Notes under the pieces: generated by a model
What the model saw: the letters and a program-made list of their open reading frames with translations, nothing else
Told to the model about the DNA's origin: nothing
Databases searched by the model: none
Program-made: the position numbers and the translations under genes
Virus record (IMG/VR): IMGVR_UViG_3300049001_000044
Location: 124,001-188,000 of that record
Reading direction: 5' to 3' (one strand)
Length of the DNA stretch: 64,000 nucleotides
Shown here: positions 7,863-62,648 of the stretch, in pieces
How positions within the stretch are numbered: the stretch's first letter is position 1
Layout of the letters: every line of letters starts with the position of its first letter

Positions 7863-7951
7863 TCTGGGACTTACCAGAGGTGCTCAGAGGTGTTCAATGT
7901 GTAGTGATGATAACTTCTATGTGCTTCTGTTAGAAGGTCTCTGAGCACCTC
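7863..7951. repeat. Dispersed intergenic element copy 1 (13-bp inverted arms, 49-nt spacer)
   Basis: GAGGTGCTCAGAG 7877-7889 and CTCTGAGCACCTC 7939-7951. Confidence 0.85.
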
Positions 7952-7962
7952 CAGAAAGCACG

Positions 7963-7983
7963 AAAGGCCCACGAGGGGCCTTT
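7963..7983. terminator. Probable intrinsic terminator hairpin
   Basis: AAAGGCCC-ACGAG-GGGCCTTT, intergenic. Confidence 0.6.
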
Positions 7984-8002
7984 GTTTGTATATAGCGGAG
8001 GA

Positions 8003-8284
8003 TTATTCCTTTGATGTCGCCAAGGTCTCCATGTAAGTGATGTCCAGACCGTCACCTTCCACATAGATGATGTCGGCAGTTCCTGTCCATCCATTTGATC
8101 GAGATCGGAATGGTAGACCCAATCCAAAGTAGTTCTTTAGGGACTGGATAATTTGGCTGGAGTTCTGCCCAAGCGAGACATAAAGTTCTGCCCTCGTCTT
8201 GTACGCTTGCATATCCACTGCGTTAGGAGTTGCGTTTGCCGTTCCCACGAAGAGGAGAGCGGCTAGGAATAAAGTTCGTTTCAT
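8003..8284 (-). CDS. Putative exported protein (93 aa)
   Basis: Start at MKRTLFLAALLFVGTANA (signal peptide), ATGA overlap. Confidence 0.7.
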   Translation of the reverse strand: MKRTLFLAALLFVGTANATPNAVDMQAYKTRAELYVSLGQNSSQIIQSLKNYFGLGLPFRSRSNGWTGTADIIYVEGDGLDITYMETLATSKE

Positions 8285-8511
8285 GGTCTGCGTTTTTTCC
8301 AATTGTAGGAGTCGTCCGTGACATCGACTCCGCGTTTACCGACTGACATGCTGTTCTCCGTAGAGATAGTTACGTGTTGATAACCAGCATTGCGAAGACG
8401 TTCTGCCTCTTTCAAGGACCTTCCCAGAACGTCTTCACCATCAACCATGGTCCCTTGCGCTTTACCTTCCTTGTCAAGGTAGTACACGATTGAGGTAATT
8501 TGTTGCATCAT
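8281..8511 (-). CDS. Hypothetical protein (76 aa)
   Basis: ORF track; overlaps neighbours by 4 nt. Confidence 0.7.
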   Translation of the reverse strand: MMQQITSIVYYLDKEGKAQGTMVDGEDVLGRSLKEAERLRNAGYQHVTISTENSMSVGKRGVDVTDDSYNWKKRRP

Positions 8512-8807
8512 GCGAGTTGAGCCCTCTCTTGAAGGATATCAATCAGTGCTGCTGAGTCTTTCATCCAACGAACGTACTCCACTTCAGTGAAGCCCAGGTA
8601 GTCGCGAAGGGTCAACCCACAGCCAGCTTCAGACTGATGCCACAGATCGACGAAGTTGTCGATGTTCTCTGCGAAGGCATCACCTTGCAGGCACTGTTCG
8701 ATAAAAGACGGATCGGTCTCGTAAGGTTTCAGCGCTGCGTCCAGCTCTGCGATCTTTTCCTCGGTCCATGGTTGATCCATGCCGATGAAGGGTGCGATCA
8801 AATTCAT
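8508..8807 (-). CDS. Hypothetical protein (99 aa)
   Basis: ORF track; 4-nt overlaps. Confidence 0.7.
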   Translation of the reverse strand: MNLIAPFIGMDQPWTEEKIAELDAALKPYETDPSFIEQCLQGDAFAENIDNFVDLWHQSEAGCGLTLRDYLGFTEVEYVRWMKDSAALIDILQERAQLA

Positions 8808-9592
8808 ACTTTGTCTCCAAACAGGAATTGATTAGGATTGACCAGCAGCTTGAGTTCAGGGAAAGTGGTTTCAGTACACGACCTCAGCACTGGGCCAGTA
8901 GGACGATGCGCCTCTGGGATTTTTGCCATCTGGTCAGAAGTCAGTTCGACTTCCTTCGTGACTCGATGAACGAAAGTACCATGCTTGAAGAAGGCAGGCA
9001 TGTCATCGAATGGATGTCCGATTTCTTCCAGCATTTTCTTCTTGCCTTCGCCATCCACACCATGCAGTTTGCGGCTGGAGAAGTGGGCCTGCGCTGCCAT
9101 CGAGATGGCATTCTTCACCGCGTCTTGCTGGCGCCATAGGTAGTTAAGGTATGCTTCGTTAAGGTCCTCAACTTGCCAAACGCGGCAGTCAAAGGTAGGG
9201 TAGGTGTGCTGCTTCTCAGGCAGGATGCCAGGTAGATTCTTCGTGAAGTAGCTGGTGGCGAGTGATGCCAGTACCGAGGTCAGCTTCTGGAATTTGCCAT
9301 CGAAGAGGTAGGTGCCAAGGTTGTCTTCTTCCACGTAGTAGCACAGCGAGATTTCGTCCGACTGAGTGTAGCCAACCAGAGCGTGGGTCTCTTCGACCAG
9401 GTACTTCGTGGTACCGATCATGAGGGCGCTCATGCGTTCGTCGTACGGACGGTTCAGACCCTTAGTGAAGGTGTGGAATGCCCGACCATCCAGACGAGCC
9501 ATGATCGGCTTACCCTTCACAGCTTTCCTTCCAGCTTCTGCCTGTTCGACTTCTTTCAGGCGATCACCCAGTGTGTCTTTGCTGTCGGTCAT
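8804..9592 (-). CDS. thg1: tRNA(His) guanylyltransferase Thg1-like 3'-5' polymerase
   Basis: ARLDGRAFHTFT, YTQSDEIS, FDGKFQKL, FDCRV, WRQQDAVKNAIS motifs. Confidence 0.93.
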   Translation of the reverse strand: MTDSKDTLGDRLKEVEQAEAGRKAVKGKPIMARLDGRAFHTFTKGLNRPYDERMSALMIGTTKYLVEETHALVGYTQSDEISLCYYVEEDNLGTYLFDGKFQKLTSVLASLATSYFTKNLPGILPEKQHTYPTFDCRVWQVEDLNEAYLNYLWRQQDAVKNAISMAAQAHFSSRKLHGVDGEGKKKMLEEIGHPFDDMPAFFKHGTFVHRVTKEVELTSDQMAKIPEAHRPTGPVLRSCTETTFPELKLLVNPNQFLFGDKV

Positions 9593-9726
9593 TTCGCCTC
9601 CACCACGCAGCCATGTTGTACCTTCGCCAGTTGCAGTTCATGTTTCAGGTATTTGTCGTATGCTTCGTTACCACCCAGCACCAACAAGATGCCGATGATC
9701 ATGATTGCGCCCCATTTATGTTCCAT
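9589..9726 (-). CDS. Small membrane-anchored protein (45 aa)
   Basis: MEHKWGAIMIIGILLVLGG...; ATGA overlap with thg1; not in ORF track. Confidence 0.55.
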   Translation of the reverse strand: MEHKWGAIMIIGILLVLGGNEAYDKYLKHELQLAKVQHGCVVEAK

Positions 9727-9898
9727 GTTTCATATCTCCTTCAAGTTGTTCACGTAGTTGTTTTGCTTCTGCTCTCGCTATATCACGATCATCTATTACG
9801 TGACTCCAGCTACCAGCGGTGAAGTAGGGATTCTCAGTAAGTTCAGGACCAGGCTTCCAATCGTCTGGCACCTTCAAGATCATGGTGAAGTACTTCAT
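9716..9898 (-). CDS. Hypothetical protein (60 aa)
   Basis: ORF track; ATGA overlap with acb1-like gene. Confidence 0.6.
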   Translation of the reverse strand: MKYFTMILKVPDDWKPGPELTENPYFTAGSWSHVIDDRDIARAEAKQLREQLEGDMKHGT

Positions 9899-10380: not shown

Positions 10381-10407
10381 GTGGGAGGGATTTTGTAGAA
10401 GTGTATT

Positions 10408-10438
10408 ATTGTAGCATTTGGTGGATCACGTTAAAACT
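10408..10438 (-). promoter_or_regulatory. Phage promoter AGTTT-N20-TACAAT
   Basis: Motif copy upstream of acb1-like gene. Confidence 0.7.
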
Positions 10439-10445
10439 GGGTTCA

Positions 10446-10453
10446 GATAAATA
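10446..10453 (+). promoter_or_regulatory. Late promoter motif GATAAATA
   Basis: 21 nt before the plus-strand ORF at 10475. Confidence 0.65.
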
Positions 10454-10474
10454 CCCATTTTATAGGATCACCAA

Positions 10475-22556: not shown

Positions 22557-22643
22557 TGGGACTTACAACAGGCATCGATCAGGGAGATCGATATGGCATC
22601 GGAAGGGAAAAGATATGCAACTCGTTGTAGAGTTGATGGAGTA

Positions 22644-28666: not shown

Positions 28667-28697
28667 ATTGTAGCGCACCAGAGGTGCTCAGAAAACT
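28667..28697 (-). promoter_or_regulatory. Phage promoter AGTTT-N20-TACAAT overlapped by the repeat element
   Basis: Exact spacing; the spacer contains GAGGTGCTCAGA (28681-28692). Confidence 0.72.
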
Positions 28698-28755
28698 TCG
28701 ACCTGATGAATGTGTATGTTTATGTGATTGTCGTACGGAGGTCTCTGAGCACCTC
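28681..28755. repeat. Dispersed intergenic element copy 2
   Basis: GAGGTGCTCAGA 28681-28692 / TCTGAGCACCTC 28744-28755, 51-nt spacer. Confidence 0.85.
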
Positions 28756-28827
28756 AGGAGGGCCCAGAAGATGCGCAGGAGCCTATCTCACTAGGCTCCT
28801 GTAAGAGGATCCAACAGTTGATACAGG

Positions 28828-29065: not shown

Positions 29066-29362
29066 TCACGGATAATATTTCGAGACAATCGTCTCGATTA
29101 CTGCAGCGAGTATAAACAGCGAGATGCCCACCACTAACAGTGCGTTGGCTATCCTTGGCTTGGGCTTTGATGGCAACCACAGGAGCAACGCGATGAGTAG
29201 AAAATCGAGGTGGTGGAGGAAGCGAAAACCCCAGCCACCAACGTACTGAAAATGCCACTTAGTCTGCAACCCCCATTGCAGTAAGCCATTCAGGTAGTCG
29301 AGACTAGCGATGATGCTAAGAGCACCGCCTAGCACCGCCGCCAAATTGAGTAGCCTCCTCAT
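29066..29362 (-). CDS. Three-TM membrane protein, candidate immunity protein
   Basis: Hydrophobic 98 aa; ATGA-coupled to the hydrolase gene. Confidence 0.65.
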   Translation of the reverse strand: MRRLLNLAAVLGGALSIIASLDYLNGLLQWGLQTKWHFQYVGGWGFRFLHHLDFLLIALLLWLPSKPKPRIANALLVVGISLFILAAVIETIVSKYYP

Positions 29363-30048
29363 CGCAGCCCCTGCTCGTACAGGTACTTGGCGAGCTCCCT
29401 TCGCCGCTGGCGTCCGAGTCGAGTGTTCGGTCTGTAGTAGAAGTGGCCGAAGCCGGCAATGTCTTGCGACAGCTTGTTCTCGTCTTCGAGCTGGCCTTTA
29501 GAGAGCCAGAGCTTCCACAGGGGCATACCCGCATAAATCGGATCGCCATGATGCGTTAGGTTGAGGACGATGACGCGCCGTATGTTGCCGTTGTTCTGCA
29601 ACTTCCCTAGGAAGTCTTTGCTGATCGGAGAAGCGATCAGCACCAGGTGGTCCACGATGTGGTGAAAACGGGAGTACGCCATCGCTGTATGCGCAGCCAT
29701 CAACGAGCCATAGGAGTAGCCGATCAGGTTAAATTGGTCCGCATCCACCTGCTCCAACCCTTCAATCATCCACGTTTTCTCGTTGCCAGCGGTGTTGAGG
29801 CGCAAGTCTAAGGCAGAGCGAATGGCATCCCGTATCTGACCTTGCGTGCGTTTGCCGACCCACACATGCTTGATGCCAGCTTCCTGTAACGATGCAACCT
29901 GATCGGCGATGTACGAGCCGTTCAACCCGGCACCGCCCCAGTACACGGTACCACGCGGCCTTCCAACTTTGATCTTGATTGGTGTCTTGTCTGACTTGGG
30001 CGTAAGCTCAGCCTTTACGACCACGGGTTCAAACAGAGGGGTGGCCAT
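29359..30048 (-). CDS. Alpha/beta hydrolase (lipase-like, GxSxG)
   Basis: NLIGYSYGS nucleophile elbow, VLIASP, GDPIY, GFGHFYY. Confidence 0.8.
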   Translation of the reverse strand: MATPLFEPVVVKAELTPKSDKTPIKIKVGRPRGTVYWGGAGLNGSYIADQVASLQEAGIKHVWVGKRTQGQIRDAIRSALDLRLNTAGNEKTWMIEGLEQVDADQFNLIGYSYGSLMAAHTAMAYSRFHHIVDHLVLIASPISKDFLGKLQNNGNIRRVIVLNLTHHGDPIYAGMPLWKLWLSKGQLEDENKLSQDIAGFGHFYYRPNTRLGRQRRRELAKYLYEQGLR

Positions 30049-30049
30049 G

Positions 30050-30565
30050 TTAGGCCCCTTCCGGCATGATGGTGATCTTGATATTGGCCGGATCGCTCAT
30101 CTCGATCCTCTCCGTCTTGCCTTCGCCGTCAGTCCTGCCCTCGATGACCCTGCCTTCGCACTCGATGCTGTACCCACGATGCATGAGTATGTCGCCTGTT
30201 GCTTCGTCATGGAGAACGAATTGCTGATCGAAACCCTCGTTCGTCTTGCCTACCCACTGGCCGTTCTCCTCCACGAAGCGGATCGGTACTTCCTCGCCTG
30301 ATGTATTGGTTACACCGTCCTTGTCGTTCAGCGTAGAGATGAGCGGGCAACCACAGCTCGTCTTCATACCGTGCAGAACTTTGGCAACGCCGTTCACCTT
30401 CGAACGCTCGTATCCCTCTGCGATAACGCAGCCTTTCGAGCAGGATATCTTCGCGCCAACCACGGCGACTGGCCTACCCATACTCTTTACAAACTCGACG
30501 CCTTCCAGTACAGTTGCGCCACAAGCGGCGAAATCATCCTTACGAATCCAACCAATGATACGCAT
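30050..30565 (-). CDS. PAAR-domain protein with C-terminal extension
   Basis: DFAACGATVLEG, GRPVAVVGAKISC, GVAKVLHGMKTSCGCPLI, then FDQQFVL...IEGRTDGEGKT. Confidence 0.88.
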   Translation of the reverse strand: MRIIGWIRKDDFAACGATVLEGVEFVKSMGRPVAVVGAKISCSKGCVIAEGYERSKVNGVAKVLHGMKTSCGCPLISTLNDKDGVTNTSGEEVPIRFVEENGQWVGKTNEGFDQQFVLHDEATGDILMHRGYSIECEGRVIEGRTDGEGKTERIEMSDPANIKITIMPEGA

Positions 30566-30636
30566 GGATCGTTTCCTTTCAATTTGACTTCGATCAAAAC
30601 CTCGGTTATTGTTGAGGTTAGTTCAATAATATCTCA

Positions 30637-30714
30637 GAGGTGACCCAAGGCGTTGCTAATGATCATATAGTACGCACAATACGGAGGTCTCTGAGCACCT
30701 CTGGTAAGCCCAGA
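30637..30714. repeat. Dispersed intergenic element copy 3 (left arm degenerate)
   Basis: TACGGAGGTCTCTGAGCACCTC 30680-30701 identical to 28734-28755; 30689-30708 is the reverse complement of 7870-7889. Confidence 0.85.
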
Positions 30715-30718
30715 ATGC

Positions 30719-30748
30719 AATAGAGGACACCATCGAAGGTCCTCTATT
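30719..30748. terminator. Hairpin, probable terminator
   Basis: 10-bp inverted repeat AATAGAGGAC / GTCCTCTATT. Confidence 0.55.
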
Positions 30749-39733: not shown

Positions 39734-41059
39734 TTACTTCATGTGAGACTGAATGTACTCAAGAGCGTCGTCAGTTAGTTCACCCATATTCAGCGAAGGC
39801 CACCGATGGAAGAAGTCTACGAACGCATTCTCAACCTTCCTGTGAACTGCATGGCCGCCCTGTCGAAGAGCATGAACAACGCCCGCAAATAGACGTGCAT
39901 CGATCGCAACACATGGACCGCTGAACCAACACTCAACATTCGTTGGTAGCTTCCGTCCGAACTCAACCATCTTTAAGTTCAGGGTGTCAGGGTGGAACAT
40001 AACAGCGGCAAGAGCTTGAAGTCCCCTTCCCTTATTCTTGCTGAGGATGTCCATCAATTCTTTCTTCGGCGTTTCTTCAAATGCATCGCACCATCTTTCA
40101 GCGAAATCGTCGGTGTTGCTGTCGATGAAGTCGTTGATAGCACTGACGCTGGCCATAGTCATTTGTTTCCCATCGCCAAGTTCCAGCCCGATATCCTCTA
40201 AGAGGTGCTCGAACTCGTCAGAGAACAAATCGACATCAATACCATCAGACCAAGACGTGACGATATCGTTGTGAATGAAGTCATCCACATTACTCACCAC
40301 CACTTTGGTGCCATCGAATGGAACGATGACCATCGGCATACCATAGCTCGCCGCTTCAGCAATGTTAGAAGAGCAGATAAGTGACTTGCTTCGCGATGGA
40401 AAATCCTTCATGCTATCAGAAATGTCCATCATCAACTGGTAGATGTTGTTCGTATCTCTTGAGGTGCGCTCGCCCTGCGATGCGTCGATCGTCATAACTG
40501 CGACGTCATGCTTGAATCCGCGGAAGAGCAGACCACCAGTCGAAATTGCTTGAAGGCCGCGTGAGCAGTGCTTGTTGAGAAGGTCAACAGCTTTCTTCAC
40601 ATCGACATACTCGACGGCCCATGGCTTGACGACCGCCTCAGTGATTGGCTTTGGCTCGCGCTCCATGATGTCGCCTGTGATCTTCTTGAAGCCATTGCGT
40701 TGGTACCATGCCTTGAGCTGTGTCTTGGTTAGATTCTTCCCCTCCCTTCCGCCTGCGTTCTTAAGCGGCTTAACAGTGAGGTCCATCTTCACCTGATGCT
40801 TGTCAGCCAGGTCGGTCAGCCACTTCATGAACTCACGAGCGTTGCCTTGGTTCTTCTCAATCGACATGATGCTACTGATGTGGATCATGCCTTGCCACTT
40901 GCTAATCTCCGCCATCATTTTGTCCTGCCAGATGGCCATACGTGGACTCCAAGGATGCGGGGTCGTTTGTTCATGATACTCTTTCATGAACGCATCGAGG
41001 CCTGGGTTCGCCTTCAAACTTATGCGAACTACCTCTGATAGGAACTGTTTGAATCTCAT
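39734..41059 (-). CDS. GNAT acetyltransferase fused to an ART-like domain
   Basis: QGNAREFM...LKAWYQRNGF (GNAT); LFRG...FPSRSKSLICSS...A..YG...VECWFSG. Confidence 0.7.
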   Translation of the reverse strand: MRFKQFLSEVVRISLKANPGLDAFMKEYHEQTTPHPWSPRMAIWQDKMMAEISKWQGMIHISSIMSIEKNQGNAREFMKWLTDLADKHQVKMDLTVKPLKNAGGREGKNLTKTQLKAWYQRNGFKKITGDIMEREPKPITEAVVKPWAVEYVDVKKAVDLLNKHCSRGLQAISTGGLLFRGFKHDVAVMTIDASQGERTSRDTNNIYQLMMDISDSMKDFPSRSKSLICSSNIAEAASYGMPMVIVPFDGTKVVVSNVDDFIHNDIVTSWSDGIDVDLFSDEFEHLLEDIGLELGDGKQMTMASVSAINDFIDSNTDDFAERWCDAFEETPKKELMDILSKNKGRGLQALAAVMFHPDTLNLKMVEFGRKLPTNVECWFSGPCVAIDARLFAGVVHALRQGGHAVHRKVENAFVDFFHRWPSLNMGELTDDALEYIQSHMK

Positions 41060-51579: not shown

Positions 51580-53438
51580 ATTGTTTTCTTCCCAATGCTT
51601 TGCTTGGTGGAGGAGTTTAGAATCTGATGCATGGTCGGTTTAGCCGAAGTGTACTCAGTGCGACGATCTTGCTCAATGAAGATCCAACGGTTCTTCACAG
51701 CGCTGAAGCGGTGCAGTCGTGGAGCAATCTTCGTATCAGTTGGATAGTAGAGACGGAAGTATTCACCATCCTTCGACTTCGTTGGGTCAGGGAGTTGGTA
51801 GCCTTCGACGTACGGTTCACCATTCTTTGGTAGACCATCTTCGACATAGGTAGGCGCCCTTGCTTTCATCTTCACTGGCGCTGGTTGACCCTTCGCGTTT
51901 CCAGTAGGAACAGGCGGAGTCATGTGCACCATTTCAATGCTCAGTCCATCATCTGATCCGCGTTCAGGAACCGCTTTCGCTGCCGCCTTCATCGTCTCTT
52001 CGGTTACTTCCAACACAGACTCATCAATGTGACCAGCACCATCAGCAAGGATCGTGTCAGCGGTGAGATACTTCTGAGTGTCGAACGTGCCGAAGATGTC
52101 TCTCGTTTCTTGCGACGGGATTGCCTCTTGAGCTTGGAAGCGGTAGAGCACTGGCTTCCATCCAGTTGTGTAGCCAACAGACGCCCATCCAGTGTCGGTA
52201 ACTTCCAAGAACTTCTTCACAGGACGAAGGTTATGATCGTACTGCATTTCAGGAATGACCTCGATGATGTCACCGGTAACGATAGGGCGACCCATCAGTT
52301 GGACCATCACGGCATATGATACAGTGAACGAGTACTGATCGAGAATGTTCAGACCGAATTTTGACAGATCGGAGATACTGTCGTTCGTGCTATACTGCGC
52401 CTTGATTCGCAGTGGCTGCTTCGCGTAGTCACGGTCCCTGTTCTCTTGGAAGAACAAGTCTTGCACGTTATTGATGTCAGTTGGTGGGCTATCAAGAATG
52501 TCCAGCTCAAGCACTTCCCAGCTATCGGTTCCAGTGAACATCGTTGGTACGACACGAATCGCTTTCACCAACAACTCCGTCTGTAAATTCATCGTGACAG
52601 GAGATACAGACTGGACTAGGTTGAACACGCCCACTCGCTTCCAAACGTAGTTGATTGGGAAGCTAAACATGTCGCCTGTCATAAAGTCCACACCGCCACC
52701 AATCAACGTGAAGTTGACGATTGTGGAGACAAACTGTGAATTTACCGTTGCGACGCCAAGTTGCTTCATAGCACCCACGACCGGCTTCCACATAACTTGG
52801 AAGGACGTTGAGTTGATTGCCACGAGCGTCACTACGCCTGCGACCGGGTTCTGTCCTATTGCTGTTGGTGTGAGCGTGCCATTGCCAAGACCACTGAAAG
52901 TAACCTCACCAAATTCTACCTTACCATCTGCGATCTCAACTCTAACTTGCTTCGCAAAATTGAAGGCAGTGTTACCTTGCTTGATGACGACGGCGCCCAC
53001 CTTTACCCAGTTAGGTTTTGCAGGGCTATTTTCTGGCTCGTTGCCAGGCCGAGCAGTGACGATACCAAAGTCAACACCTACATAGGCTTTTCCTGCTACG
53101 TCACTACCTGCTTGGAAGCTTCGCCATGCACCGTTGTTGATGTTGGAAATTGGGAAGCCAGGTGCTGGGGTCGATGACATCAGCGTGCCTTTAGACAGCA
53201 CACTACCATCACCTTGCTCATGCACACCTAGCAGCTTGTAGATGTTGAGTGGGGCACCATTGATGTTGAGATTCTCTGCAGCGTAGGACTCCTGCAGCGC
53301 TGTTTCATTGCGAGCGCAGAGGTCTTCCTCACCAGAGATTTCCCACTCGCCCATACAAGGATTAGTGGGAACGTACGAAGGTGTATCGTCGTGTTGGGTG
53401 TTTAGGCTACCAGCCGCGTCTTCGCAAGGGTAAGTCAT
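51576..53438 (-). CDS. Neck protein (gp14-like) with large inserted domains
   Basis: N-terminal AENLNINGAPLNIYKLLG; DLFFQENRDRDY, LSKFGL, GDII, FLEVTD. Confidence 0.6.
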   Translation of the reverse strand: MTYPCEDAAGSLNTQHDDTPSYVPTNPCMGEWEISGEEDLCARNETALQESYAAENLNINGAPLNIYKLLGVHEQGDGSVLSKGTLMSSTPAPGFPISNINNGAWRSFQAGSDVAGKAYVGVDFGIVTARPGNEPENSPAKPNWVKVGAVVIKQGNTAFNFAKQVRVEIADGKVEFGEVTFSGLGNGTLTPTAIGQNPVAGVVTLVAINSTSFQVMWKPVVGAMKQLGVATVNSQFVSTIVNFTLIGGGVDFMTGDMFSFPINYVWKRVGVFNLVQSVSPVTMNLQTELLVKAIRVVPTMFTGTDSWEVLELDILDSPPTDINNVQDLFFQENRDRDYAKQPLRIKAQYSTNDSISDLSKFGLNILDQYSFTVSYAVMVQLMGRPIVTGDIIEVIPEMQYDHNLRPVKKFLEVTDTGWASVGYTTGWKPVLYRFQAQEAIPSQETRDIFGTFDTQKYLTADTILADGAGHIDESVLEVTEETMKAAAKAVPERGSDDGLSIEMVHMTPPVPTGNAKGQPAPVKMKARAPTYVEDGLPKNGEPYVEGYQLPDPTKSKDGEYFRLYYPTDTKIAPRLHRFSAVKNRWIFIEQDRRTEYTSAKPTMHQILNSSTKQSIGKKTI

Positions 53439-54277
53439 TTGTATTGCTCTAGGAATTCTTTGAATACGTCTTCACGAATGAAGAGCGCTTTACCTTCTAT
53501 CCAAGCTTCAACGCCTGGCTTCTCAGGGACGGTTGCTTTTGCAGCGATTGCCGTCGTGAGGTTATTTATCGAAGGATCAAGACAGTACTCCAGCAATTCT
53601 TCAAAGTTCGAAAACCCTTTCTTCGCCATCGTGCGAACTGCTGCTTCAATTGACACCACGTCCTGGTGACTGATTTTGACCTTGCCCGCATCGGCCTTCT
53701 CGACTAAGTCGTAAAGCATCTTCATCGTCCATCCACGAAGAGTGCCACGAATTGCTTCAGCGTCGGTGTCAGGGACGATTCCACGGTTAATCAGCTTCAT
53801 CAAGCTCATTAGGAGGCCATTGAGGGAGTTTAGTCCTGGCAAGCCAATCGATTCCTCCAGCACTGGGAATGATTTCCAGATATCGTGCGAGTTGCACTTA
53901 CCAACCTTCGCGTCATCAGCTGGGATCACGTAGAAGATGTCGCCATATCCAGACGCAATGCGATCGGTCGACGCACAAATGTAGGCGCTCTCACGGCTAG
54001 GATATGCTTCCCATTTCTTAGAAGTGGCGATGAACTTCGTGTAGTAGTTGTGAGTGTTCTTACTCACACGTTTGAAGGAGGTGGAGTCACCCAATTGGTA
54101 CTCGCCCTTGGTGCCGTCGACACCGCGCACCAAGTTTAGCTTACCATCTTTTACCCTCTTCATAACCTTAGACGCATTCGCTTTAACCCACTCCACTGCC
54201 TCATTGTAGCTGACAGCTTTTGATGATGGGACTTTTGGAAGAGCAACCTCTTCCATGATGTAGTCTTTAAACCGCAT
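53435..54277 (-). CDS. ART-like protein, subfamily A, tandem copy 6
   Basis: MRFKDYIME; LVRG...YPSRESAYICAS...YG...IPADD...VEAWIEG. Confidence 0.68.
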   Translation of the reverse strand: MRFKDYIMEEVALPKVPSSKAVSYNEAVEWVKANASKVMKRVKDGKLNLVRGVDGTKGEYQLGDSTSFKRVSKNTHNYYTKFIATSKKWEAYPSRESAYICASTDRIASGYGDIFYVIPADDAKVGKCNSHDIWKSFPVLEESIGLPGLNSLNGLLMSLMKLINRGIVPDTDAEAIRGTLRGWTMKMLYDLVEKADAGKVKISHQDVVSIEAAVRTMAKKGFSNFEELLEYCLDPSINNLTTAIAAKATVPEKPGVEAWIEGKALFIREDVFKEFLEQYK

Positions 54278-55109
54278 AGAGTTCTTCTTTCAATTGGTTG
54301 ATTAGTTTATGGGTGTGCGAACCCATGCGATCACTTTCGATGCGGATAAACACGCACTCACCGCGAATCCAAATTTCTCTAGCCTCGTTCACGCCACCGT
54401 AATCACTCGCATCAGTGTGTAAAAACTTGTTCAGGGTAGGGTCGAAAATTCGTTCGAAGAAGGCCTGAAGATCAGAGTCCTTCTTACCCCTCATGTTAAC
54501 GATGACGGCGCGAATCGTGTCTGCTTCATAATCCTGCAAAGTTCCTACCATTTCCCGTAACATGTCGGCAGTAATTTCGCTTAGCTCATTCCTGAACTGG
54601 TCAATGTTGTCAGGGTCCAGCTTGTACTTGTGGTTGGAGAGCAGTCTCACCCATCCAAAGAACTGGTTCAGATCACCAATGTCAGGGAACCCAGTGCCGC
54701 GAAGACCCTCTCTAAAGCTGTACCAGAAATCACCGTCAGGACAAATACCCATGTGTGCGTTGTCGGATGGAATGACGAGGAAGGCCTTACCATACTGCCA
54801 CGCAGTCTGCTCAAACGATGAGCAGATCCATGCTTGATCGCGACGGGGATAATCGCTCCAACGTGGTGATGAAGAGACGAGAGCGTTCGTCTCATTCGAA
54901 GTGAAGGCGGCCTTACGTTTGAACTTGCTGCTGTCGCCGACAGCATAGTCCTGTTGCAGTGGCATGCCACGGAAGATTGCGACGTCAGGATTATCGAATA
55001 GGGCGTTAGTGTACCACTTCGAGTTCTTCCTAATCCAATCGTACGCTTCCTCTTTCGAGATGGCGGTGGATTGAGGTCCACCCTCAGCAAGGTATGCTTT
55101 GAATCTCAC
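54267..55109 (-). CDS. ART-like protein, subfamily A, tandem copy 5
   Basis: MRFKAYLAE; IFRG...YPRRDQAWICSS...YG...DFW...REIWIRG. Confidence 0.68.
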   Translation of the reverse strand: MRFKAYLAEGGPQSTAISKEEAYDWIRKNSKWYTNALFDNPDVAIFRGMPLQQDYAVGDSSKFKRKAAFTSNETNALVSSSPRWSDYPRRDQAWICSSFEQTAWQYGKAFLVIPSDNAHMGICPDGDFWYSFREGLRGTGFPDIGDLNQFFGWVRLLSNHKYKLDPDNIDQFRNELSEITADMLREMVGTLQDYEADTIRAVIVNMRGKKDSDLQAFFERIFDPTLNKFLHTDASDYGGVNEAREIWIRGECVFIRIESDRMGSHTHKLINQLKEELYAV

Positions 55110-55969
55110 AGCTCCAACTCCTTACGCAGGAATTCGATGATGTCGCGATCGCTGTTGCCAGTGACCTTGATGAACGCGGCTTTACCGTTGATCCATACTT
55201 CTCGTCTGCTGTCGACGCCACGATAGTCTTCGCCCTTTGTGTGGATGAATCCATTTGCATTTGGATCGAGTGCTTTTTCCAACCATTCGTCCATGTTGTC
55301 AGCGTGCATTTTCTTCATCGACTCTACAAGAGGTCTAACAATGCGAATGTCTTGCATCGACTCCTTCAACTCTTGCTCGTTATACTTGCTGAGCGAGTGA
55401 CGAAGCTTTGTAGGATTATTCTCTGGCATCGGAGTGGAAGGGGTGTTGAGCTTGTCAATGAATCGATTAACGTCATCGACGTCAAAGAAGCCAGACCCTT
55501 TCAAACCTACCTTGTCAAAGCATGCCCAGAAGTCATACGATGGACAGACACCGATTCGTGCTGTGTCCGCAGGAATGACAAAGTACAGACTACCTTCTGC
55601 ATCAGGATCCTTTGAACTATACCCACGAAATGCATAGAGGTCTGCGCCCGACAGGGAGGTGGAGCAGATGTACGCGCTCTCACGTGGTGGGAACGACTGC
55701 CATTCAGGATAGGTTGGGATGAGCGAGTGAATGTGATTGCTGGTGTTTGCGGCTCTCCTTCTGAAGAGGCGTGAATCACCGATAGCAAAGTCATCAAAGG
55801 AATCACGCATGCCGCGATAGATTCGATTGTTGGTTTTGCTATCATCCAAAATGCTGTGGATTCCTTCCGCTGCATTCTTTTGAATCCAATCTACTATCTC
55901 TGCTGCGTGAGACGTAACGGTGAATGGCTTACGGTATTCTTGCTCTTGTAGGTATGACTTAAACCGCAT
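55106..55969 (-). CDS. ART-like protein, subfamily A, tandem copy 4
   Basis: MRFKSYLQE; IYRG...FPPRESAYICST...DFW...REVWING. Confidence 0.68.
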   Translation of the reverse strand: MRFKSYLQEQEYRKPFTVTSHAAEIVDWIQKNAAEGIHSILDDSKTNNRIYRGMRDSFDDFAIGDSRLFRRRAANTSNHIHSLIPTYPEWQSFPPRESAYICSTSLSGADLYAFRGYSSKDPDAEGSLYFVIPADTARIGVCPSYDFWACFDKVGLKGSGFFDVDDVNRFIDKLNTPSTPMPENNPTKLRHSLSKYNEQELKESMQDIRIVRPLVESMKKMHADNMDEWLEKALDPNANGFIHTKGEDYRGVDSRREVWINGKAAFIKVTGNSDRDIIEFLRKELEL

Positions 55970-56792
55970 CTTTCAAAGTCCTGATAATTTTTTCGATGTT
56001 GTGACCGTCGACCTTGATGAATGCGGCTCTACCTGCAACCCACACTTCACGATCACCAGTACGTTTGTGATAATTAGACGCCGTGGTCTGTGAGAACTTA
56101 TTTAGCTCGGGGCCAAGGACGATCTCAAGCAGGTCGTCCATGTTATCGACATCCAGATTATTCATCGCATCAACGACGGCAGTGTGGTAGACTTTCTTCA
56201 TCACATCCTTCGTCCATGATCGAAGCACATCATGCAGCTTCTCTGAATCGGTCTCAGGAAGATGGACATTCAGAGTTTCAGCGGTGGTGGTGAGGAAGGT
56301 GTTCAGGTCTGCAACGTCATTGATGTTCCAAAGGTCAGCATGAGCTAGACCTCTTTCGAACGATGGCCAGAAGTCATCACGTGGGCAGATGCCGATGTGG
56401 GCGTTATCTGCTGGGATGACTAGGAATGGATCGTAGCGTGATGAGTATTTAGCAGCAGTGTGCAAGTTGTCGGCGCAGATGTATGCGCTCTCACGACTAG
56501 GATAGTTCTTCCATCGTGGCGAAGTGGCAATGAATGAGTTGACGAAGTTTTTGGTGTTAGCCGACTTCCTCTTGAACATAGCCGAGTTACCCACTGCATA
56601 TTGAGTATCAGACGGCACGCCTCTCACGATGTAGTTGTCAGCACTTAACACATTCGTGATGTAGTGGGAGGCATGACGCTTGCACCACTCCCTAAATGGG
56701 CCGATAGGGATAGGAGCGATGACTGGTTTGTCGCTCATCCCGGCTCCTAGCACGTGGAAGTCCGACTCATTAATGAATTGCTTAAAGCGCAT
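55959..56792 (-). CDS. ART-like protein, subfamily A, tandem copy 3
   Basis: MRFKQFINE; IVRG...YPSRESAYICAD...DFW...REVWVAG. Confidence 0.68.
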   Translation of the reverse strand: MRFKQFINESDFHVLGAGMSDKPVIAPIPIGPFREWCKRHASHYITNVLSADNYIVRGVPSDTQYAVGNSAMFKRKSANTKNFVNSFIATSPRWKNYPSRESAYICADNLHTAAKYSSRYDPFLVIPADNAHIGICPRDDFWPSFERGLAHADLWNINDVADLNTFLTTTAETLNVHLPETDSEKLHDVLRSWTKDVMKKVYHTAVVDAMNNLDVDNMDDLLEIVLGPELNKFSQTTASNYHKRTGDREVWVAGRAAFIKVDGHNIEKIIRTLKDAV

Positions 56793-57687
56793 TCAGCCAC
56801 TCCCTTACTTTTTTCTCTGCTGATTCGTAATCATATTCGTCGACAAATTCACTGATCGAGATGAACGCACATGTGCCGCCAATCCATACTTCATGATCAC
56901 CTTCCACATGGAAGGTCTCGCCCTTAGTGTGAGTGAAACCAGAAGCGGCTGGATCCAGTAGGCCTTCTAAGAACGTTAGCATGGACTCACGATAGTCCAT
57001 CTTCTCGGCGATCATCTTAATCCTTCTACTGTACTCGTTATGGAAGTCGACATGAATCTTGTCCGACATGTCATGAAAGTCTTTGTTAGTATCAGGGTGA
57101 TCACCAATCATGTCTTCCAAGTCTTCACGCCAAATGCTTCTCAAAATCCTGGTAAGTTCTGCGTAGTCAGTGCTGTTGTCAATTGGTTCACCAAATCGTT
57201 GGCATATGGCGCTCAAGACTTCGTTCATCATCTCAACACCGCCACCTTTGAACATTTTATCGAACTCTTTGAAGCCGCACCAGAAGTCGAAAGCTGGAAC
57301 AACGCCAATTCCCGCATCGTCAGCAGGAATTACCAGGTAGGGGTCACCAAAGTTGTTCGCGTTATCTAGGTCAGTAGTGCATATGTAGGCGCTCTCACGC
57401 TTAGGATAGTCTTTCCATTTAGAAGAGCGGGAAACCAACAAGTTGATGAAGTTGGAAGTGTTTGCCGCCTTTCGAACGAATTTGCTCGTATCGCCTAGAC
57501 CGTATGGGTGATCTTCCCTACCCATTGAAAGACCACGCCAAATAATTGGACCACCACGAAGCAGACCAGCAACATGCGCCTTGCTATGCTGCTTAATCCA
57601 CTCAACCACTTCTTCCTTTGATGTTGGAGAAGCATGCGGGTAGCTGTACTTCTCCTCTTGTTCCTTTAGGTAATCTTTGAATCTCAT
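56782..57687 (-). CDS. ART-like protein, subfamily A, tandem copy 2
   Basis: MRFKDYLKE; IWRG...YPKRESAYICTT...FG...DFW...HEVWIGG. Confidence 0.68.
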   Translation of the reverse strand: MRFKDYLKEQEEKYSYPHASPTSKEEVVEWIKQHSKAHVAGLLRGGPIIWRGLSMGREDHPYGLGDTSKFVRKAANTSNFINLLVSRSSKWKDYPKRESAYICTTDLDNANNFGDPYLVIPADDAGIGVVPAFDFWCGFKEFDKMFKGGGVEMMNEVLSAICQRFGEPIDNSTDYAELTRILRSIWREDLEDMIGDHPDTNKDFHDMSDKIHVDFHNEYSRRIKMIAEKMDYRESMLTFLEGLLDPAASGFTHTKGETFHVEGDHEVWIGGTCAFISISEFVDEYDYESAEKKVREWLNAL

Positions 57688-58589
57688 TCTAACTCTTCTA
57701 CCCAGTCAAGTGGGTTATCGGCGTGGCCGATAACTGCTACCTCACCATGCACCCACACCTCATGGTCTCCATGAATGTCGAACTCTCTTCCATTTAAGAC
57801 TTGGAATTTGTTCGTGTATGGATCCATCGACTTGGACAGCCATTCATACAGGCTGTCTCCCATGTTCGGGCTCTGCAGGATGGTTTCACGGATGATTTTC
57901 GCCCAACGCTGGTTGTAATCGCGGGTGTGGTCAGGATGGTCGTTGTCGAACCCTTCCAACTGATTTACGAAATCGTGAAGCTTCTCGGTGGTCACATCGC
58001 TCAACACCCTTCTCATCTCGTCAAAGGTCATCTTCTGCTCATCTAACTTCAGATTCATTTCTTCTTTGATGAACTCCAGCATCGTGTTGATGGAGTCGAC
58101 GTTCTTGTGTCTGCGCTTTAGGAACGAAAAGCTGTCCCAAAAATCTGACTCAGTGCAGATTCCGATTTGCGCGCTGTCGGCAGGAATGATTAGTGCAAGG
58201 TCACCATACTGTTCCGCCTTGTGCTCGTTCGTCGTGCAGATGTATGAAGACGAACGAGGTGGGAACCGCTTCCATGCTGCGTCATTGCTCACCAACAAGT
58301 TGATGTAATTGGCAGTATAGGCTGCACGACGCTTGAGCGATCTCGAATCACCAATCAAGTACGGTGCCTCTGCCGTGAATCCACGATAGATCGGTGATGC
58401 GCTGCCATCCTTCAGCTTCTGAATGTAGCGAGAGGCGTTCTTCTTAATCCACTCCTTAACCTCATGCTCTTCGACCCGCCGCATGTTTTGAAAGTTTGGG
58501 GTGGAGATCGTCTCCTCATCGTCGTCCCATGGAAAAGTCGGTTCACCGTTGTTTCGATATTGCTCTTTGATGTAGTCTTTGAATCTCAT
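57684..58589 (-). CDS. ART-like protein, subfamily A, tandem copy 1
   Basis: MRFKDYIKE; IYRG...FPPRSSSYICTT...YG...DFW...HEVWVHG. Confidence 0.68.
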   Translation of the reverse strand: MRFKDYIKEQYRNNGEPTFPWDDDEETISTPNFQNMRRVEEHEVKEWIKKNASRYIQKLKDGSASPIYRGFTAEAPYLIGDSRSLKRRAAYTANYINLLVSNDAAWKRFPPRSSSYICTTNEHKAEQYGDLALIIPADSAQIGICTESDFWDSFSFLKRRHKNVDSINTMLEFIKEEMNLKLDEQKMTFDEMRRVLSDVTTEKLHDFVNQLEGFDNDHPDHTRDYNQRWAKIIRETILQSPNMGDSLYEWLSKSMDPYTNKFQVLNGREFDIHGDHEVWVHGEVAVIGHADNPLDWVEELE

Positions 58590-60445: not shown

Positions 60446-60475
60446 TGGAAGCCCTGTCGATATTGTACGATCAGG

Positions 60476-60483
60476 TATTTATC
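60476..60483 (-). promoter_or_regulatory. Late promoter motif GATAAATA
   Basis: Upstream of the gp13 / ART / gp14 / gp15 operon. Confidence 0.65.
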
Positions 60484-61321: not shown

Positions 61322-61782
61322 GAAAATATTACCGTCCCACGTGTTGCAGCAGTGCATGGCAAGATGCCTGCTAGGGTGTCATCGCTAGGCGTGCCATCAA
61401 AACAGAGTGTGGAGATGGAGTGACCTTTACCTGCGTTTGGCCCGCTCAGGAACTTGACTAGACTTCCATCACTGAACTCATACCTTTCTTTCGTCCTACT
61501 ACGAAGGAGTCCGATGTAGAGATCGGAAGGTAGGCTGTCCAGCATCTTACCAAATTCTGCAGCGCGTTCACGCCGGCTTTGAACATTGGTCGATACTACG
61601 AGATGGGTGCGAAGAGGTTGGAAGATTGCTTGCCACAGAATGTAGGCGAGGGATTGCTCCACGCCTGCTTCATTCTGTTCACCTTGCTTGATAGTAGGTG
61701 GTGTGATGCCTAGTTGGGATTCGCAGAAGTACTCAAACGAATCTCTGCAATGGATGAGGGTGAGGAGTTGGGATGGTGACAT
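61318..61782 (-). CDS. Degenerate terminase-ATPase-like protein (154 aa)
   Basis: Colinear with TerL N-domain (CRDSFEYFCE, YILW, YEFSDGS, GKG.S, LCFDG) but no Walker A and no Walker B Glu. Confidence 0.6.
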   Translation of the reverse strand: MSPSQLLTLIHCRDSFEYFCESQLGITPPTIKQGEQNEAGVEQSLAYILWQAIFQPLRTHLVVSTNVQSRRERAAEFGKMLDSLPSDLYIGLLRSRTKERYEFSDGSLVKFLSGPNAGKGHSISTLCFDGTPSDDTLAGILPCTAATRGTVIFS

Positions 61783-61789
61783 GGAATTT

Positions 61790-61816
61790 CTAAATAGTCG
61801 TTTGAGACTTATTTAG
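61790..61816. promoter_or_regulatory. Overlapping divergent CTAAATA motifs
   Basis: CTAAATA on plus 61790-61796 and on minus 61810-61816, between divergent genes. Confidence 0.5.
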
Positions 61817-61824
61817 GATTCACC

Positions 61825-62052
61825 ATGATCAAGGTTCGTGCACGTGCTTGGCCGCACATGTTCAAAGCGGGAGAAACGGTCGAGGCAGTGATTAAGAAGG
61901 TCAACTGCCACGACGTTATGGGAGAGGAGTTGGCGGAGCTTCTACAGAAGTACCACGAAATCAATGGGAGTCATGTTCCAAGGGCGGCAACACAAGCGTT
62001 AATTCCTGTGTTGGTCCGCCATCAGACGAAGGTGTTTGGCAAGAAGCGTTAA
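61825..62052 (+). CDS. Hypothetical protein (75 aa)
   Basis: Fills the gap between minus genes; AGGA RBS; late-type motif upstream. Confidence 0.6.
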   Translation: MIKVRARAWPHMFKAGETVEAVIKKVNCHDVMGEELAELLQKYHEINGSHVPRAATQALIPVLVRHQTKVFGKKR

Positions 62053-62474
62053 TTGCCTGGCATCAGGGTGATGAGGCCAGAGATTTCACGGTCTTCCTTC
62101 ACCACATTCGGTGCTGGCCAGCTCGACTTGGTTTTGGCTTCCTTCGCCGCATGCTTGATGCGGGCTTTTTCCGCCTTCTCGCGGTCCTTCAATGAACCGA
62201 AGACTGCACGGAAACGGTAGGAGATTTTCAGCACGTCGTCATCGACGGACTCCAACGTGTAGTAGATGTTCTCGAGGGCGTAAAGGGTGGGGTCTTGCGC
62301 CTTGGTTACGCCATGGAATTGTGCGATGATGTTATGGATCTTCTGAAGATCCGGGCCTTTGGCCGACATGACGTTCGCTGCGAGATTTGCGAGATTCGAA
62401 ATGCCCAGCTCCATGTCTTCCCACTTGCTGCCGAGTTTAACTTGGAAGGATTGGCGTTCGATAACTGCAGTCAT
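62049..62474 (-). CDS. Hypothetical protein (141 aa)
   Basis: ORF track; AGGAG RBS; AGTTT promoter upstream. Confidence 0.72.
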   Translation of the reverse strand: MTAVIERQSFQVKLGSKWEDMELGISNLANLAANVMSAKGPDLQKIHNIIAQFHGVTKAQDPTLYALENIYYTLESVDDDVLKISYRFRAVFGSLKDREKAEKARIKHAAKEAKTKSSWPAPNVVKEDREISGLITLMPGN

Positions 62475-62510
62475 ACTTGCTCCTTAGAGGATGTGTCAAC
62501 GTGATGAGTA

Positions 62511-62541
62511 ATTATACGTCATTGTGAGGAGCTGAAAAACT
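62511..62541 (-). promoter_or_regulatory. Phage promoter AGTTT-N20-TATAAT
   Basis: Exact motif copy. Confidence 0.72.
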
Positions 62542-62569
62542 AGCTGTCTACAATACGACACAGACATAT

Positions 62570-62648
62570 TCTGAGACTTACTAGAGGGGCCCAGTGATGA
62601 CAAAAGAGCTTCGATGCTATTACTAACATCGAAGCTCTAGAGGTGCTC
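62570..62648. repeat. Dispersed intergenic element copy 4 (degenerate) around a terminator
   Basis: 62570-62594 matches 7863-7887 at 21/25 positions; AGAGGTGCTC at 62639-62648; 12-bp hairpin 62605-62638. Confidence 0.7.

What the first reader, a model, noticed from the sequence alone, without database searches (positions are those of the whole stretch)
7863..62648. Dispersed inverted-repeat element at four transcription-unit junctions
Seen: core TCTGGG(A)CTTACCAGAGGTGCTCAGAG and its complement at 7863-7951, 28681-28755, 30637-30714 and 62570-62648. Copies 1 and 2 have 12-13-bp inverted arms about 50 nt apart. Each copy lies at an intergenic junction beside a hairpin; three are upstream of or overlapping an AGTTT promoter, and at 28681 an arm occupies the promoter spacer. 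TGGGACTTAC also occurs at 22557. Known: T4-type PeSL (promoter-early stem-loop) cassettes mediate modular shuffling. Inference: recombination sites for gene-cassette exchange, operators for looping repression, or replication-origin sites.
Basis: partly seen in the sequence, partly recalled or inferred. Interest (0 to 1): 0.72.

Follow-up and report, generated by a model that had tools for sequence, protein, structure and literature searches.

The report
Dispersed palindromic repeat of jumbo phage
A hairpin-forming repeat of about 100 bp, with conserved inverted arms and a spacer of exactly 49 nt, sits between genes about 26 times in a 343-kb soil jumbo phage, usually just upstream of an early-type promoter; it resembles bacterial REPIN/MITE repeats and T4 PeSL cassettes without being either, and its function is not proven.

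Summary
All four window sites (7870-7958, 28674-28762, 30620-30708, 62577-62665) belong to one repeat family. The 343,229-bp phage genome has 25-26 copies, and five related metagenomic phage contigs carry it too. The unit is discrete: homology between copies stops at its borders. It has inverted arms of 13-33 bp, with the inner CnCAGAG/CTCTGnG nearly invariant. The spacer is exactly 49 nt in about 21 of 24 scorable copies, although its sequence is poorly conserved. Copies are intergenic. Ten of 24 lie within -35..+70 nt of an AGTTT-N19-21-TAnAAT promoter (null 1.9, P<0.0002), and eight follow an intrinsic terminator. The arms show some covariation, and the spacer centre is inverted between copies. 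There is no sense/antisense bias, no transposase or recombinase, and no copy in bacterial genomes. Sites are kept in relatives at about 75% nt identity and lost in more distant ones. Gene-content differences flank some copies. It is not a PeSL: the conserved unit contains neither the promoter nor the terminator. It is closest to a REPIN/BIME-type palindromic repeat but has no RAYT. An uncharacterised small-protein family is flanked by the element in every phage examined. Function is inferred: a factor-recognised module at transcription-unit boundaries.

The parts
7863..7958 (-). Copy 1, whole element. Arm 7863-7889, 49-nt spacer 7890-7938, arm 7939-7955.
   Evidence: 80.2 bits on the minus strand; long-range stem, z -3.7.
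7963..7983 (-). Intrinsic-terminator-like hairpin of the upstream gene (8003-8302, minus), directly 5' of copy 1 in the sense of transcription.
7795..7825 (-). AGTTT-N-TAAAAT promoter, 34 nt downstream of copy 1.
   Evidence: sequence read.
28674..28762 (-). Copy 2, core. Arms 28681-28693 and 28743-28755, spacer 28694-28742; the outer arm reaches about 28772.
   Evidence: 70.9 bits; z -4.1.
28667..28697 (-). AGTTT...TACAAT promoter overlapping copy 2. The -35 is at the end of the spacer, and the 3' arm (in the sense of transcription) fills the promoter spacer.
   Evidence: sequence read.
28776..28801 (-). Hairpin without a clear T run, directly 5' of copy 2 in the sense of transcription.
   Evidence: Read.
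30620..30717 (-). Copy 3. Intact 32-nt arm at 30684-30715 with GGAGGT extension; spacer 30640-30688; the decayed arm keeps only CTCAGAGGTG at 30633-30642.
   Evidence: 55.1 bits; z -0.8, no long-range stem.
30720..30747 (-). Hairpin directly 5' of copy 3 in the sense of transcription.
   Evidence: Read.
62570..62666 (-). Copy 4, divergent. Arm 62570-62596 (GGGGCCCAGTG variant), spacer 62597-62645, arm 62646-62666 (CTCTGGGAGGTCC variant).
   Evidence: 47.8 bits; z -3.4.
62605..62638 (-). Apical 15-bp hairpin inside the spacer of copy 4, followed by TTTTGT on the minus strand (terminator-like).
62511..62541 (-). AGTTT...TATAAT promoter, about 27 nt downstream of copy 4.
   Evidence: sequence read.

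Best explanation
**What it is (well supported).** It is a lineage-specific, non-coding, extragenic palindromic repeat of REPIN/BIME type.
- It is a discrete unit of about 90-119 bp.
- The two inverted arms are kept similar across about 26 loci.
- A 49-nt spacer is fixed in length but free in sequence, apart from a small central GATG...CATC palindrome.
- It lies between transcription units: after the stop codon or terminator of one gene, and just before or over the AGTTT-type (probably early or middle) promoter of the next.

**How it most likely works (inferred).**
- The arms are recognition sites for a sequence-specific factor, and the fixed spacing sets the geometry of the bound complex.
- When occupied, the element would act as a boundary or operator module. 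It would modulate the adjacent early-type promoter or stop read-through from the upstream unit.
- The inverted arms also pair as a hairpin in single-stranded DNA. This would explain arm covariation and flipped spacer segments, and would make the sites prone to rearrangement. Gene indels then cluster there as a by-product.
- The best candidate for the factor is an uncharacterised family of small basic proteins. Their genes are flanked by the element in this phage and in every relative examined.
For: **Family and unit**
- Genome-wide, the core gives 21 matches against 0 for the reversed control.
- I count 25-26 copies, all but one doubtful case outside called ORFs, although 88% of the genome is coding.
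- Homology between copies is confined to the element.

**Constraint on the arms**
- Mean identity between paralogues is 0.75 and 0.71 for the arms against 0.36 for the spacer.
- Three columns are invariant (C14, G18 in the 5' arm; C72 in the 3' arm), all in the inner arm ends.
- In window copy 3 and in e305392 one arm is perfect although its partner has decayed.

**Spacing**
- The spacer is exactly 49 nt in about 21 of 24 scorable copies, orthologues included.

**Position**
- Ten of 24 copies have an AGTTT promoter within -35..+70 nt of the core's 3' end, against a null of 1.93 (P<0.0002).
- All 63 promoters of this class are on the minus strand, against 2 for the control.
- Eight copies sit directly after an intrinsic terminator.
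- In two copies an arm lies inside the promoter spacer.

**DNA level rather than RNA level**
- Sense and antisense folds are equally stable.
- G-U against A-C cells are 65:50, p=0.19.

**Hairpin dynamics**
- Pair 15/75 reads UA 11, CG 6, UG 7, other 1.
- 66% of cells are paired against 36-46% when the partner is slid.
- There is a compensatory CTCAGAG/CTCTGAG to CCCAGAG/CTCTGGG change between orthologues.
- A central 13-mer is inverted about the dyad between e2279 and e231824.

**Persistence**
- All four orthologous sites are kept in relatives at about 75% nt identity.

**Candidate factor**
- All four members of one paralogue family lie next to copies.
- Their homologues in L083, L084, L095 and L093 also have a copy within about 500 nt.
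- Fourteen loci around the terminase gene and three around the PAAR gene of other relatives have none.
Against: - No binding was shown. The fold of the candidate protein is unassigned, and the complex job was not folded.
- The distance from element to promoter varies from -5 to +64 nt, unlike a classical activator or repressor site.
- Fourteen of 24 copies have no AGTTT promoter nearby.
- Two copies lie at convergent gene ends, between a stop codon and a terminator, where there is no promoter to control.
- Some signals favour an RNA role. Fourteen of 26 cores start within 20 nt of the upstream stop codon. Where a T-type arm meets a G-type arm, the wobble falls on the transcribed strand 7 times to 1. 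The polarity of the inner ACCTCC extension follows transcription about 12:4.
- The linkage with the protein family may be inherited synteny rather than function.
- Gene calls come from my own crude ORF caller.
Confidence: 0.4

Rival explanations
1. RNA-level element. In polycistronic or read-through transcripts the two arms pair into a long stem. The stem would be cut by a double-strand-specific RNase (as at the T7 RNase III sites), or would protect the upstream mRNA's 3' end (as REP hairpins do). Either way it would uncouple neighbouring transcription units.
For: - Copies lie between cistrons, and 14 of 26 begin within 20 nt of the upstream stop codon.
- The stems of copies 1, 2 and 4 fold far better than shuffles.
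- There is covariation at pair 15/75, with 7 U-G against 1 C-A on the sense strand.
- The element's polarity mostly follows transcription.
- Two copies sit in true 3' UTRs ahead of the terminator.
Against: - Sense and antisense folds are equally stable, and G-U against A-C is 65:50, p=0.19.
- Eight copies lie behind an intrinsic terminator, and several have a promoter or a terminator inside the spacer. In those copies both arms are seldom on one RNA.
- A structural stem would not need one conserved sequence at 26 loci or a spacer of exactly 49 nt.
- Single arms stay perfect where no stem can form (copy 3).
- The phage encodes no RNase III, and no Rfam family matches.
Confidence: 0.25
2. Selfish or neutral mobile repeat (MITE or REPIN in the strict sense), or PeSL-like recombination cassette. 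Copies spread by transposition or by recombination between copies. Their main effect would be to shuffle gene cassettes, and they would have no regulatory role of their own.
For: - It is a discrete unit with terminal inverted repeats, and flanks are unrelated between copies.
- The arm spacing is fixed and the arms are better kept than the spacer, as reported for REPINs (PMC3116915).
- Copies are gained or lost between more distant relatives: e2279 is absent in L083, window copy 2 in L077, and window copy 3 in L076 and L078.
- Gene-content differences abut three or four of the six junctions compared.
- The spacer of orthologue L030 shares a 13-mer with the spacer of another locus, window copy 3.
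Against: - The phage has no Y1/RAYT, TnpB, DDE, tyrosine or serine recombinase.
- The arms are not found above chance in 185,579 species genomes or in 301 Burkholderiales, nor in GenBank phages or plasmids.
- No target-site duplication was seen.
- Spacers are near-random between copies, so the spread is old; yet the arms are still conserved, which points to selection in the phage.
- All four sites are kept, with no extra copies, in 23 kb of relatives at 75% nt identity.
- Three of five indels in L028 are not at elements.
Confidence: 0.2
3. Replication-related sites, such as origins or single-strand initiation hairpins.
For: The element is predicted to fold as a hairpin in single-stranded DNA, and one copy lies next to an iteron-like array.
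Against: - About 26 dispersed copies is far too many for origins.
- Only one copy lies beside the iteron-like array, and the array has a different sequence.
- Nothing else points to replication.
Confidence: 0.04

Closest known systems
[quoted passage not shown]
   Same: - Two inverted conserved arms at a perfectly conserved distance, with a less conserved spacer.
- About 100 bp, strictly extragenic, tens of copies.
- A predicted hairpin in single-stranded DNA or RNA.
- Long persistence at fixed sites.
- A particular gene is flanked by copies.
   Different: - It is in a phage, not a bacterial chromosome.
- The phage has no RAYT (Y1 HUH transposase), and no matching host repeat was found.
- The gene flanked by copies encodes a small basic protein without a recognisable nuclease fold.
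- The spacers have diverged almost to randomness.
- There is a strong association with one promoter class.
PeSL / PmSL cassettes of T4-type phages (PMC2839356, PMC4122927)
   Same: - Repeated intergenic regulatory-region sequences in a T4-superfamily myovirus.
- They lie between a terminator stem-loop and an early-type promoter.
- Some are next to small ORFan genes that differ between relatives.
   Different: A PeSL is itself the conserved terminator plus promoter. Here the conserved unit is a separate palindrome, and homology stops before the terminator and the promoter. Those differ from copy to copy and stand at variable distance.
MITEs, including the rare viral MITEs (PMC11602168)
   Same: Small, non-coding and intergenic, with terminal inverted repeats, multiple copies and no transposase of its own.
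   Different: No target-site duplication, no autonomous partner and no host copies were found. The internal sequence is not conserved. Sites are stable in relatives.
RNase III processing sites of phage T7 (from my own knowledge)
   Same: Similar-looking hairpins dispersed between cistrons of a phage.
   Different: The spacer here is 49 nt and often carries a promoter or terminator. There is no strand asymmetry. Many copies lie behind terminators. Nothing is known about cleavage.
Integron attC sites (from my own knowledge)
   Same: Imperfect inverted repeats with conserved ends and a variable centre, placed right after the stop codon of cassette genes and recombined as folded single strands.
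   Different: There is no integrase, no cassette array and no R/L box consensus.

Membership tests
REPIN | Two REP-like sequences in inverted orientation at a fixed distance, predicted to form a hairpin. | tested here: met
   Spacer of 49 nt in about 21 of 24 copies. 66% of cells pair against 36-46% when the partner is slid.
REPIN | Repetitive and confined to extragenic space. | tested here: met
   25-26 copies; all but one doubtful copy lie outside called ORFs in a genome that is 88% coding.
REPIN | A cognate RAYT (Y1 HUH transposase) gene flanked by the repeat. | tested here: not met
   PF01797 is absent from the phage. The host is unknown. The arms are not repeated in any of 185,579 species genomes or in 301 Burkholderiales.
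REPIN | Evidence of excision or duplication. | tested here: inconclusive
   Copies are present or absent between distant relatives. Only assembled contigs of DNA runs were available, with no informative joints.
PeSL (T4-type) | The conserved repeated sequence is itself a terminator stem-loop joined to an early promoter. | tested here: not met
   All matches between copies end at the element borders. Terminators and promoters differ between copies and stand at -5 to +64 nt.
PeSL (T4-type) | Flanks genes that are inserted, deleted or replaced between close relatives. | tested here: inconclusive
   Two of four junctions differ in relatives at 75% nt identity, and three other indels are not at elements.
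PeSL (T4-type) | Excised mini-circles. | not testable with these tools
   Needs PCR or deep reads of a phage lysate.
MITE | Terminal inverted repeats on a small non-coding unit. | tested here: met
   Arms of 27-33 bp; unit of about 90-119 bp.
MITE | Target-site duplication. | tested here: inconclusive
   None was seen by eye in the few copies that keep both outer ends.
MITE | An autonomous element with the same ends, or a transposase available in trans. | tested here: not met
   No DDE_Tnp_1, rve, Y1_Tnp or TnpB in the phage. No related sequence in phages, plasmids or bacterial genomes.
RNase III site (T7 type) | The stem forms on the transcribed strand and is cleaved. | tested here: inconclusive
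   No strand bias. Cleavage cannot be tested because no RNA run holds this phage.
Integron attC | Recombined by an integron integrase (tyrosine recombinase). | tested here: not met
   PF00589 is absent.
Known RNA families (Rfam 15) | A match at the gathering score. | tested here: not met
   No hit in the window. Only weak chance-level hits beside one copy.

The most novel reading that the evidence does not exclude
The element and the RGFRFG-motif small-protein family form a new, phage-autonomous repeat-protein pair. It would be analogous to REPIN-RAYT but use an unrelated, non-HUH protein. The protein would bind the CAGAGGTG-type arms at a fixed 49-bp geometry to set transcription-unit boundaries, or to mobilise cassettes, in a clade of soil jumbo phages.
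Probability: 0.15. Interest if true: 0.8.

Novelty: new variant of a known kind. Interest (0 to 1): 0.55.

Why it matters
Extragenic palindromic repeats are well known in bacteria but hardly described in phages. One survey found MITEs in about 0.01% of viral sequences (PMC11602168). Here a jumbo phage keeps about 26 copies of one such repeat at its transcription-unit junctions. The arms are under constraint, the spacer length is exact, and there is no transposase. If a phage protein reads these sites, this would be a new way for very large phage genomes to punctuate transcription when almost all genes are co-oriented. It would also be a new repeat-protein partnership. If the element is instead only a recombination scaffold, it extends the PeSL idea of modular shuffling beyond T4-like phages. 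Either way it offers a marker for this phage lineage and a concrete pair of partners to test at the bench.

Tried and rejected
**Known RNA families.** Rfam gave nothing.

**Borrowed host repeat.** The 18-mer core gave 22 single hits in 596 Gb. That is chance level, and none had a partner arm. The 16-mer in 301 Burkholderiales gave 5 hits against 7 for the control. Burkholderiales were chosen because the phage PAAR protein is nearest to Massilia.

**GenBank phages and plasmids.** No match.

**More distant relatives.** Those with terminase at 50-65% identity lack the arms and show no analogous repeat.

**Mobility enzymes in the phage.** Y1_Tnp, TnpB, phage integrase, resolvase, DDE_Tnp_1, rve and RNase III are all absent.

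**Coding potential.** Small ORFs starting at the ATG or GTG after an arm are short and not conserved, so I rejected them.

**T4 late promoter.** TATAAATA is not enriched (7 against 14 for the control). The shorter ATAAATA is intergenic in 44 of 62 cases but is not near elements, with one exception.

**Sequencing runs.** Only soil DNA runs kept as contigs were found, and none was RNA. The only joint was the assembler's own repeat.

**A loose pattern scan of viral contigs.** AGGCCCAGAG-N47-51-CTCTG returned over 100 single chance hits and was uninformative.

**Candidate protein.** No Pfam, PHROG, PDB-sequence, Atlas or Foldseek assignment. The model has pLDDT 63.

**Protein-DNA complex.** The job was not folded by the tool, so it gives no verdict and is no evidence either way.

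**Strand-asymmetry tests for RNA.** Inconclusive.

Full report
**Setting.** The window is bases 124,001-188,000 of a 343,229-bp IMG/VR virus record assembled from a soil metagenome. Its 127-bp terminal repeat is only an assembly overlap. The record encodes ribonucleotide reductase, a large terminase, a tail sheath and a head-tail adaptor. The nearest named relative is Ralstonia phage RsoM2USA, at 43% terminase identity, so this is a novel jumbo myovirus of the wider T4-like assemblage. With my own crude ORF caller, 431 of 494 genes lie on the minus strand and 88% of the sequence is coding.

**Checking the observation.**
- In the window, the 16-mer with up to 3 mismatches occurs 6 times against 0.58 expected.
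- In the whole genome it gives 21 matches against 0 for the reversed control.
- Hamming, nhmmer and by-eye searches bring the family to 25 solid copies and one doubtful one.
- A covariance model built from 25 copies finds exactly four full-length hits in the window: 7870-7958, 28674-28762, 30620-30708 and 62577-62665. Each scores best on the minus strand. There is no further copy, and none at 22557.

**Anatomy.** I describe the unit in the direction of transcription.
- It starts with an arm of up to about 33 nt, consensus (CATAT)TCTGGGACTTACCAGAGGTGCTCAGAG. A common variant reads GAGGCCCAGAG.
- A spacer follows, and then the complementary arm.
- In a gap-free alignment the inner CnCAGAG and CTCTGnG are invariant or nearly so.
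- The spacer is exactly 49 nt in about 21 of 24 scorable copies. This includes all four window copies and the orthologues in other phages.
- Spacer identity between paralogues is only 0.36, against 0.75 and 0.71 for the arms.
- The spacer usually begins with ACCTCC or ends with GGAGGT. It carries a small central palindrome, GATG at positions 16-19 and CATC near 30-34. This often extends into an apical hairpin whose sequence differs from copy to copy.
- Spacers still share short words far more often than shuffles do (52 pairs against 8.5). The shared words sit at the same or the mirrored register, so the spacers are homologous but old.
- BLAST between copies with 150-nt flanks gives no match outside the element, so it is a discrete unit.

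**Position.**
- All solid copies lie between genes. Fourteen of 26 cores start within 20 nt of the upstream stop codon.
- The genome has a promoter class AGTTT-N19-21-TAnAAT with 63 matches, all on the minus strand, against 2 for the control. It is missing from the structural-gene blocks, so it is probably early or middle.
- Ten of 24 minus-sense elements have such a promoter starting within -35..+70 nt of the core's 3' end. Random intergenic placement gives 1.93 on average and never more than 8 in 5000 trials.
- The distances are -5, -5, +13, +13, +35, +35, +39, +49, +55 and +64 nt, so the geometry is not fixed.
- In window copy 2 and in e305392 the arm lies in the promoter spacer.
- Eight copies follow an intrinsic terminator directly, giving the order terminator, element, promoter.
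- Two copies lie at convergent gene ends, between the stop codon and a bidirectional terminator.
- Several copies carry a terminator-like hairpin inside the spacer.
- A late-type ATAAATA motif (44 of 62 intergenic) is near only one copy.

**Evolution in close relatives.** Contigs of relatives at about 72-78% nt identity carry the element at all four orthologous sites that they cover. These are L009, L028 (two sites) and L030. They carry no extra copies.
- Over these pairs the arms are about 80% identical. The spacers range from 45% to 90% identical and have no indel.
- One orthologous pair shows the compensatory change CTCAGAG/CTCTGAG to CCCAGAG/CTCTGGG.
- Across all copies, pair 15/75 reads UA 11, CG 6, UG 7, other 1.
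- 66% of cells pair, against 36-46% when the partner is slid.
- Double changes exceed all but 12 of 500 shuffles.
- A 13-nt central segment is inverted about the dyad between e2279 and e231824, which otherwise run the same way. The side that carries the ACCTCC/GGAGGT extension differs between e330559 and its orthologue L030. This is what flipping of segments bounded by inverted repeats would produce.

**Evolution in more distant relatives.** Contigs with PAAR protein at 63-75% identity lack window copies 2 and 3 at the corresponding junctions. L083 lacks e2279. Relatives with terminase at 50-65% identity lack the family altogether.

**Gene content at the junctions.**
- The relative L009 lacks an 83-aa gene exactly at the 5' border of e253038.
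- At e276066, one extra gene lies upstream and non-homologous genes lie downstream.
- The gene after window copy 2 differs in L077.
- Two other junctions are syntenic, and three indels in L028 are not at elements.
- The link to gene shuffling is therefore suggestive, not shown.

**RNA or DNA?** Window copies 1, 2 and 4 fold far better than shuffles as RNA, and the complementary strand does so as DNA. Copy 3 does not. Over all copies the sense and antisense folds are equally stable, and G-U against A-C cells are 65:50, p=0.19.

The points for RNA are:
- the 7:1 sense-strand wobble where a T-type arm meets a G-type arm;
- the roughly 12:4 polarity with transcription;
- the closeness to stop codons.

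The points for a factor that reads the sequence, probably on DNA, are:
- the same arm sequence at 26 loci;
- perfect single arms beside decayed partners;
- the exact spacing;
- the position behind terminators and over promoters;
- the tolerance of flips.

**Mobility.** The phage has no Y1/RAYT, TnpB, DDE, tyrosine or serine recombinase and no RNase III. The arms are not repeated in any of 185,579 bacterial and archaeal species genomes or in 301 Burkholderiales. They are not in GenBank phages or plasmids either.

**A candidate partner.** An all-against-all search of the proteome found a four-member paralogue family at G000 1467-1907, 2360-2905, 4387-5070 and 57146-57436. All four members lie next to element copies.
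- They share a C-terminal domain of about 70 aa with the motif PGPRGFRFG, a helical N-terminal domain and a lysine-rich linker. No known family or fold matches.
- A profile search found 82 relatives.
- Each of the four contigs for which DNA could be fetched has an element within about 500 nt of the gene:
  - L083:123-212, 43.6 bits;
  - L095:895-979, 24 bits;
  - L084, on both sides of the gene, each hit cut by a contig end;
  - L093:2505-2580, AT-rich, by eye, with GAGGCCCAGAG-N50-CTCTG.
- An iteron-like palindrome, GTAGTCCTAGGACTAC, also accompanies this gene in four phages.
- The pattern recalls RAYT genes flanked by their REPs (PMC3116915), but it may only be inherited synteny.

**Verdict.** The element is closest in kind to REPIN/BIME-type extragenic palindromes. 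It fails the defining RAYT test for REPINs and the defining composition test for PeSLs. I rate a factor-recognised boundary or operator module at 0.40, an RNA hairpin for processing or stability at 0.25, a selfish or recombination-only repeat at 0.20, and replication sites at 0.04.

Noticed in passing
G000:C1 1467-1907(+), 2360-2905(-), 4387-5070(-), 57146-57436(-) (outside the window; loci L081, L082, L079, L080): A four-member paralogue family of small basic proteins with the motif PGPRGFRFG and no known domain or fold. Every member lies next to an element copy, and so do homologues in four other phage contigs.
   Followed up: partly
G000:C1 3537-3576 (outside the window); L083:30-114; L084:931-972; L093:about 1786-1806: An iteron-like array of the 16-bp palindrome GTAGTCCTAGGACTAC, 2-4 copies at a 23-24-bp period. 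It occurs at one place in the genome, beside an element copy and the RGFRFG-family gene, and the arrangement is conserved in relatives. It may be an operator or an origin.
   Followed up: partly
window, minus strand: promoter starts at 776, 5199, 7825, 10438, 17684, 22674, 22891, 27603, 28697, 62541: A promoter class AGTTT-N19-21-TAnAAT with 63 matches in the genome, all on the minus strand, against 2 for the control. It is absent from the structural-gene blocks, so it is probably the early or middle class, with an unusual -35 element.
   Followed up: partly
genome-wide; in the window e.g. 10447(+), 11559(-), 16270(-), 22555(-), 36893(-), 47196(-): The motif ATAAATA is intergenic in 44 of 62 cases, follows gene orientation and sits about 25-40 nt before start codons. 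It is probably the late promoter, a shorter form of T4's TATAAATA.
   Followed up: partly
window 30050-30565(-) and 29359-30048(-): A PAAR-motif protein is followed by an alpha/beta-hydrolase. The nearest cellular homologues (56-58% identity) are in Massilia, where the same two genes are adjacent. This is a T6SS-spike-like gene pair in a phage and a hint that the host is among the Burkholderiales.
   Followed up: partly
window 53435-58589(-), plus 39734-41059(-): A tandem array of six paralogous genes of 277-301 aa in the structural region, with a seventh paralogue elsewhere.
   Followed up: no
window 8804-9592(-): A Thg1-like tRNA-His guanylyltransferase gene. tRNA T-loop words are the most enriched intergenic k-mers in the genome, which implies large tRNA arrays outside the window.
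   Followed up: no
G000:C1 about 286470-286560(-) compared with L028:about 90-150: A non-coding leader of about 60 nt lies between a promoter pair and an element copy. It is nearly 100% identical to the relative, while the neighbouring genes are about 78% identical. It may be a structured 5' UTR or a small RNA.
   Followed up: no
It is either a relic of an arm or chance; the covariance model does not score it.
   Followed up: yes
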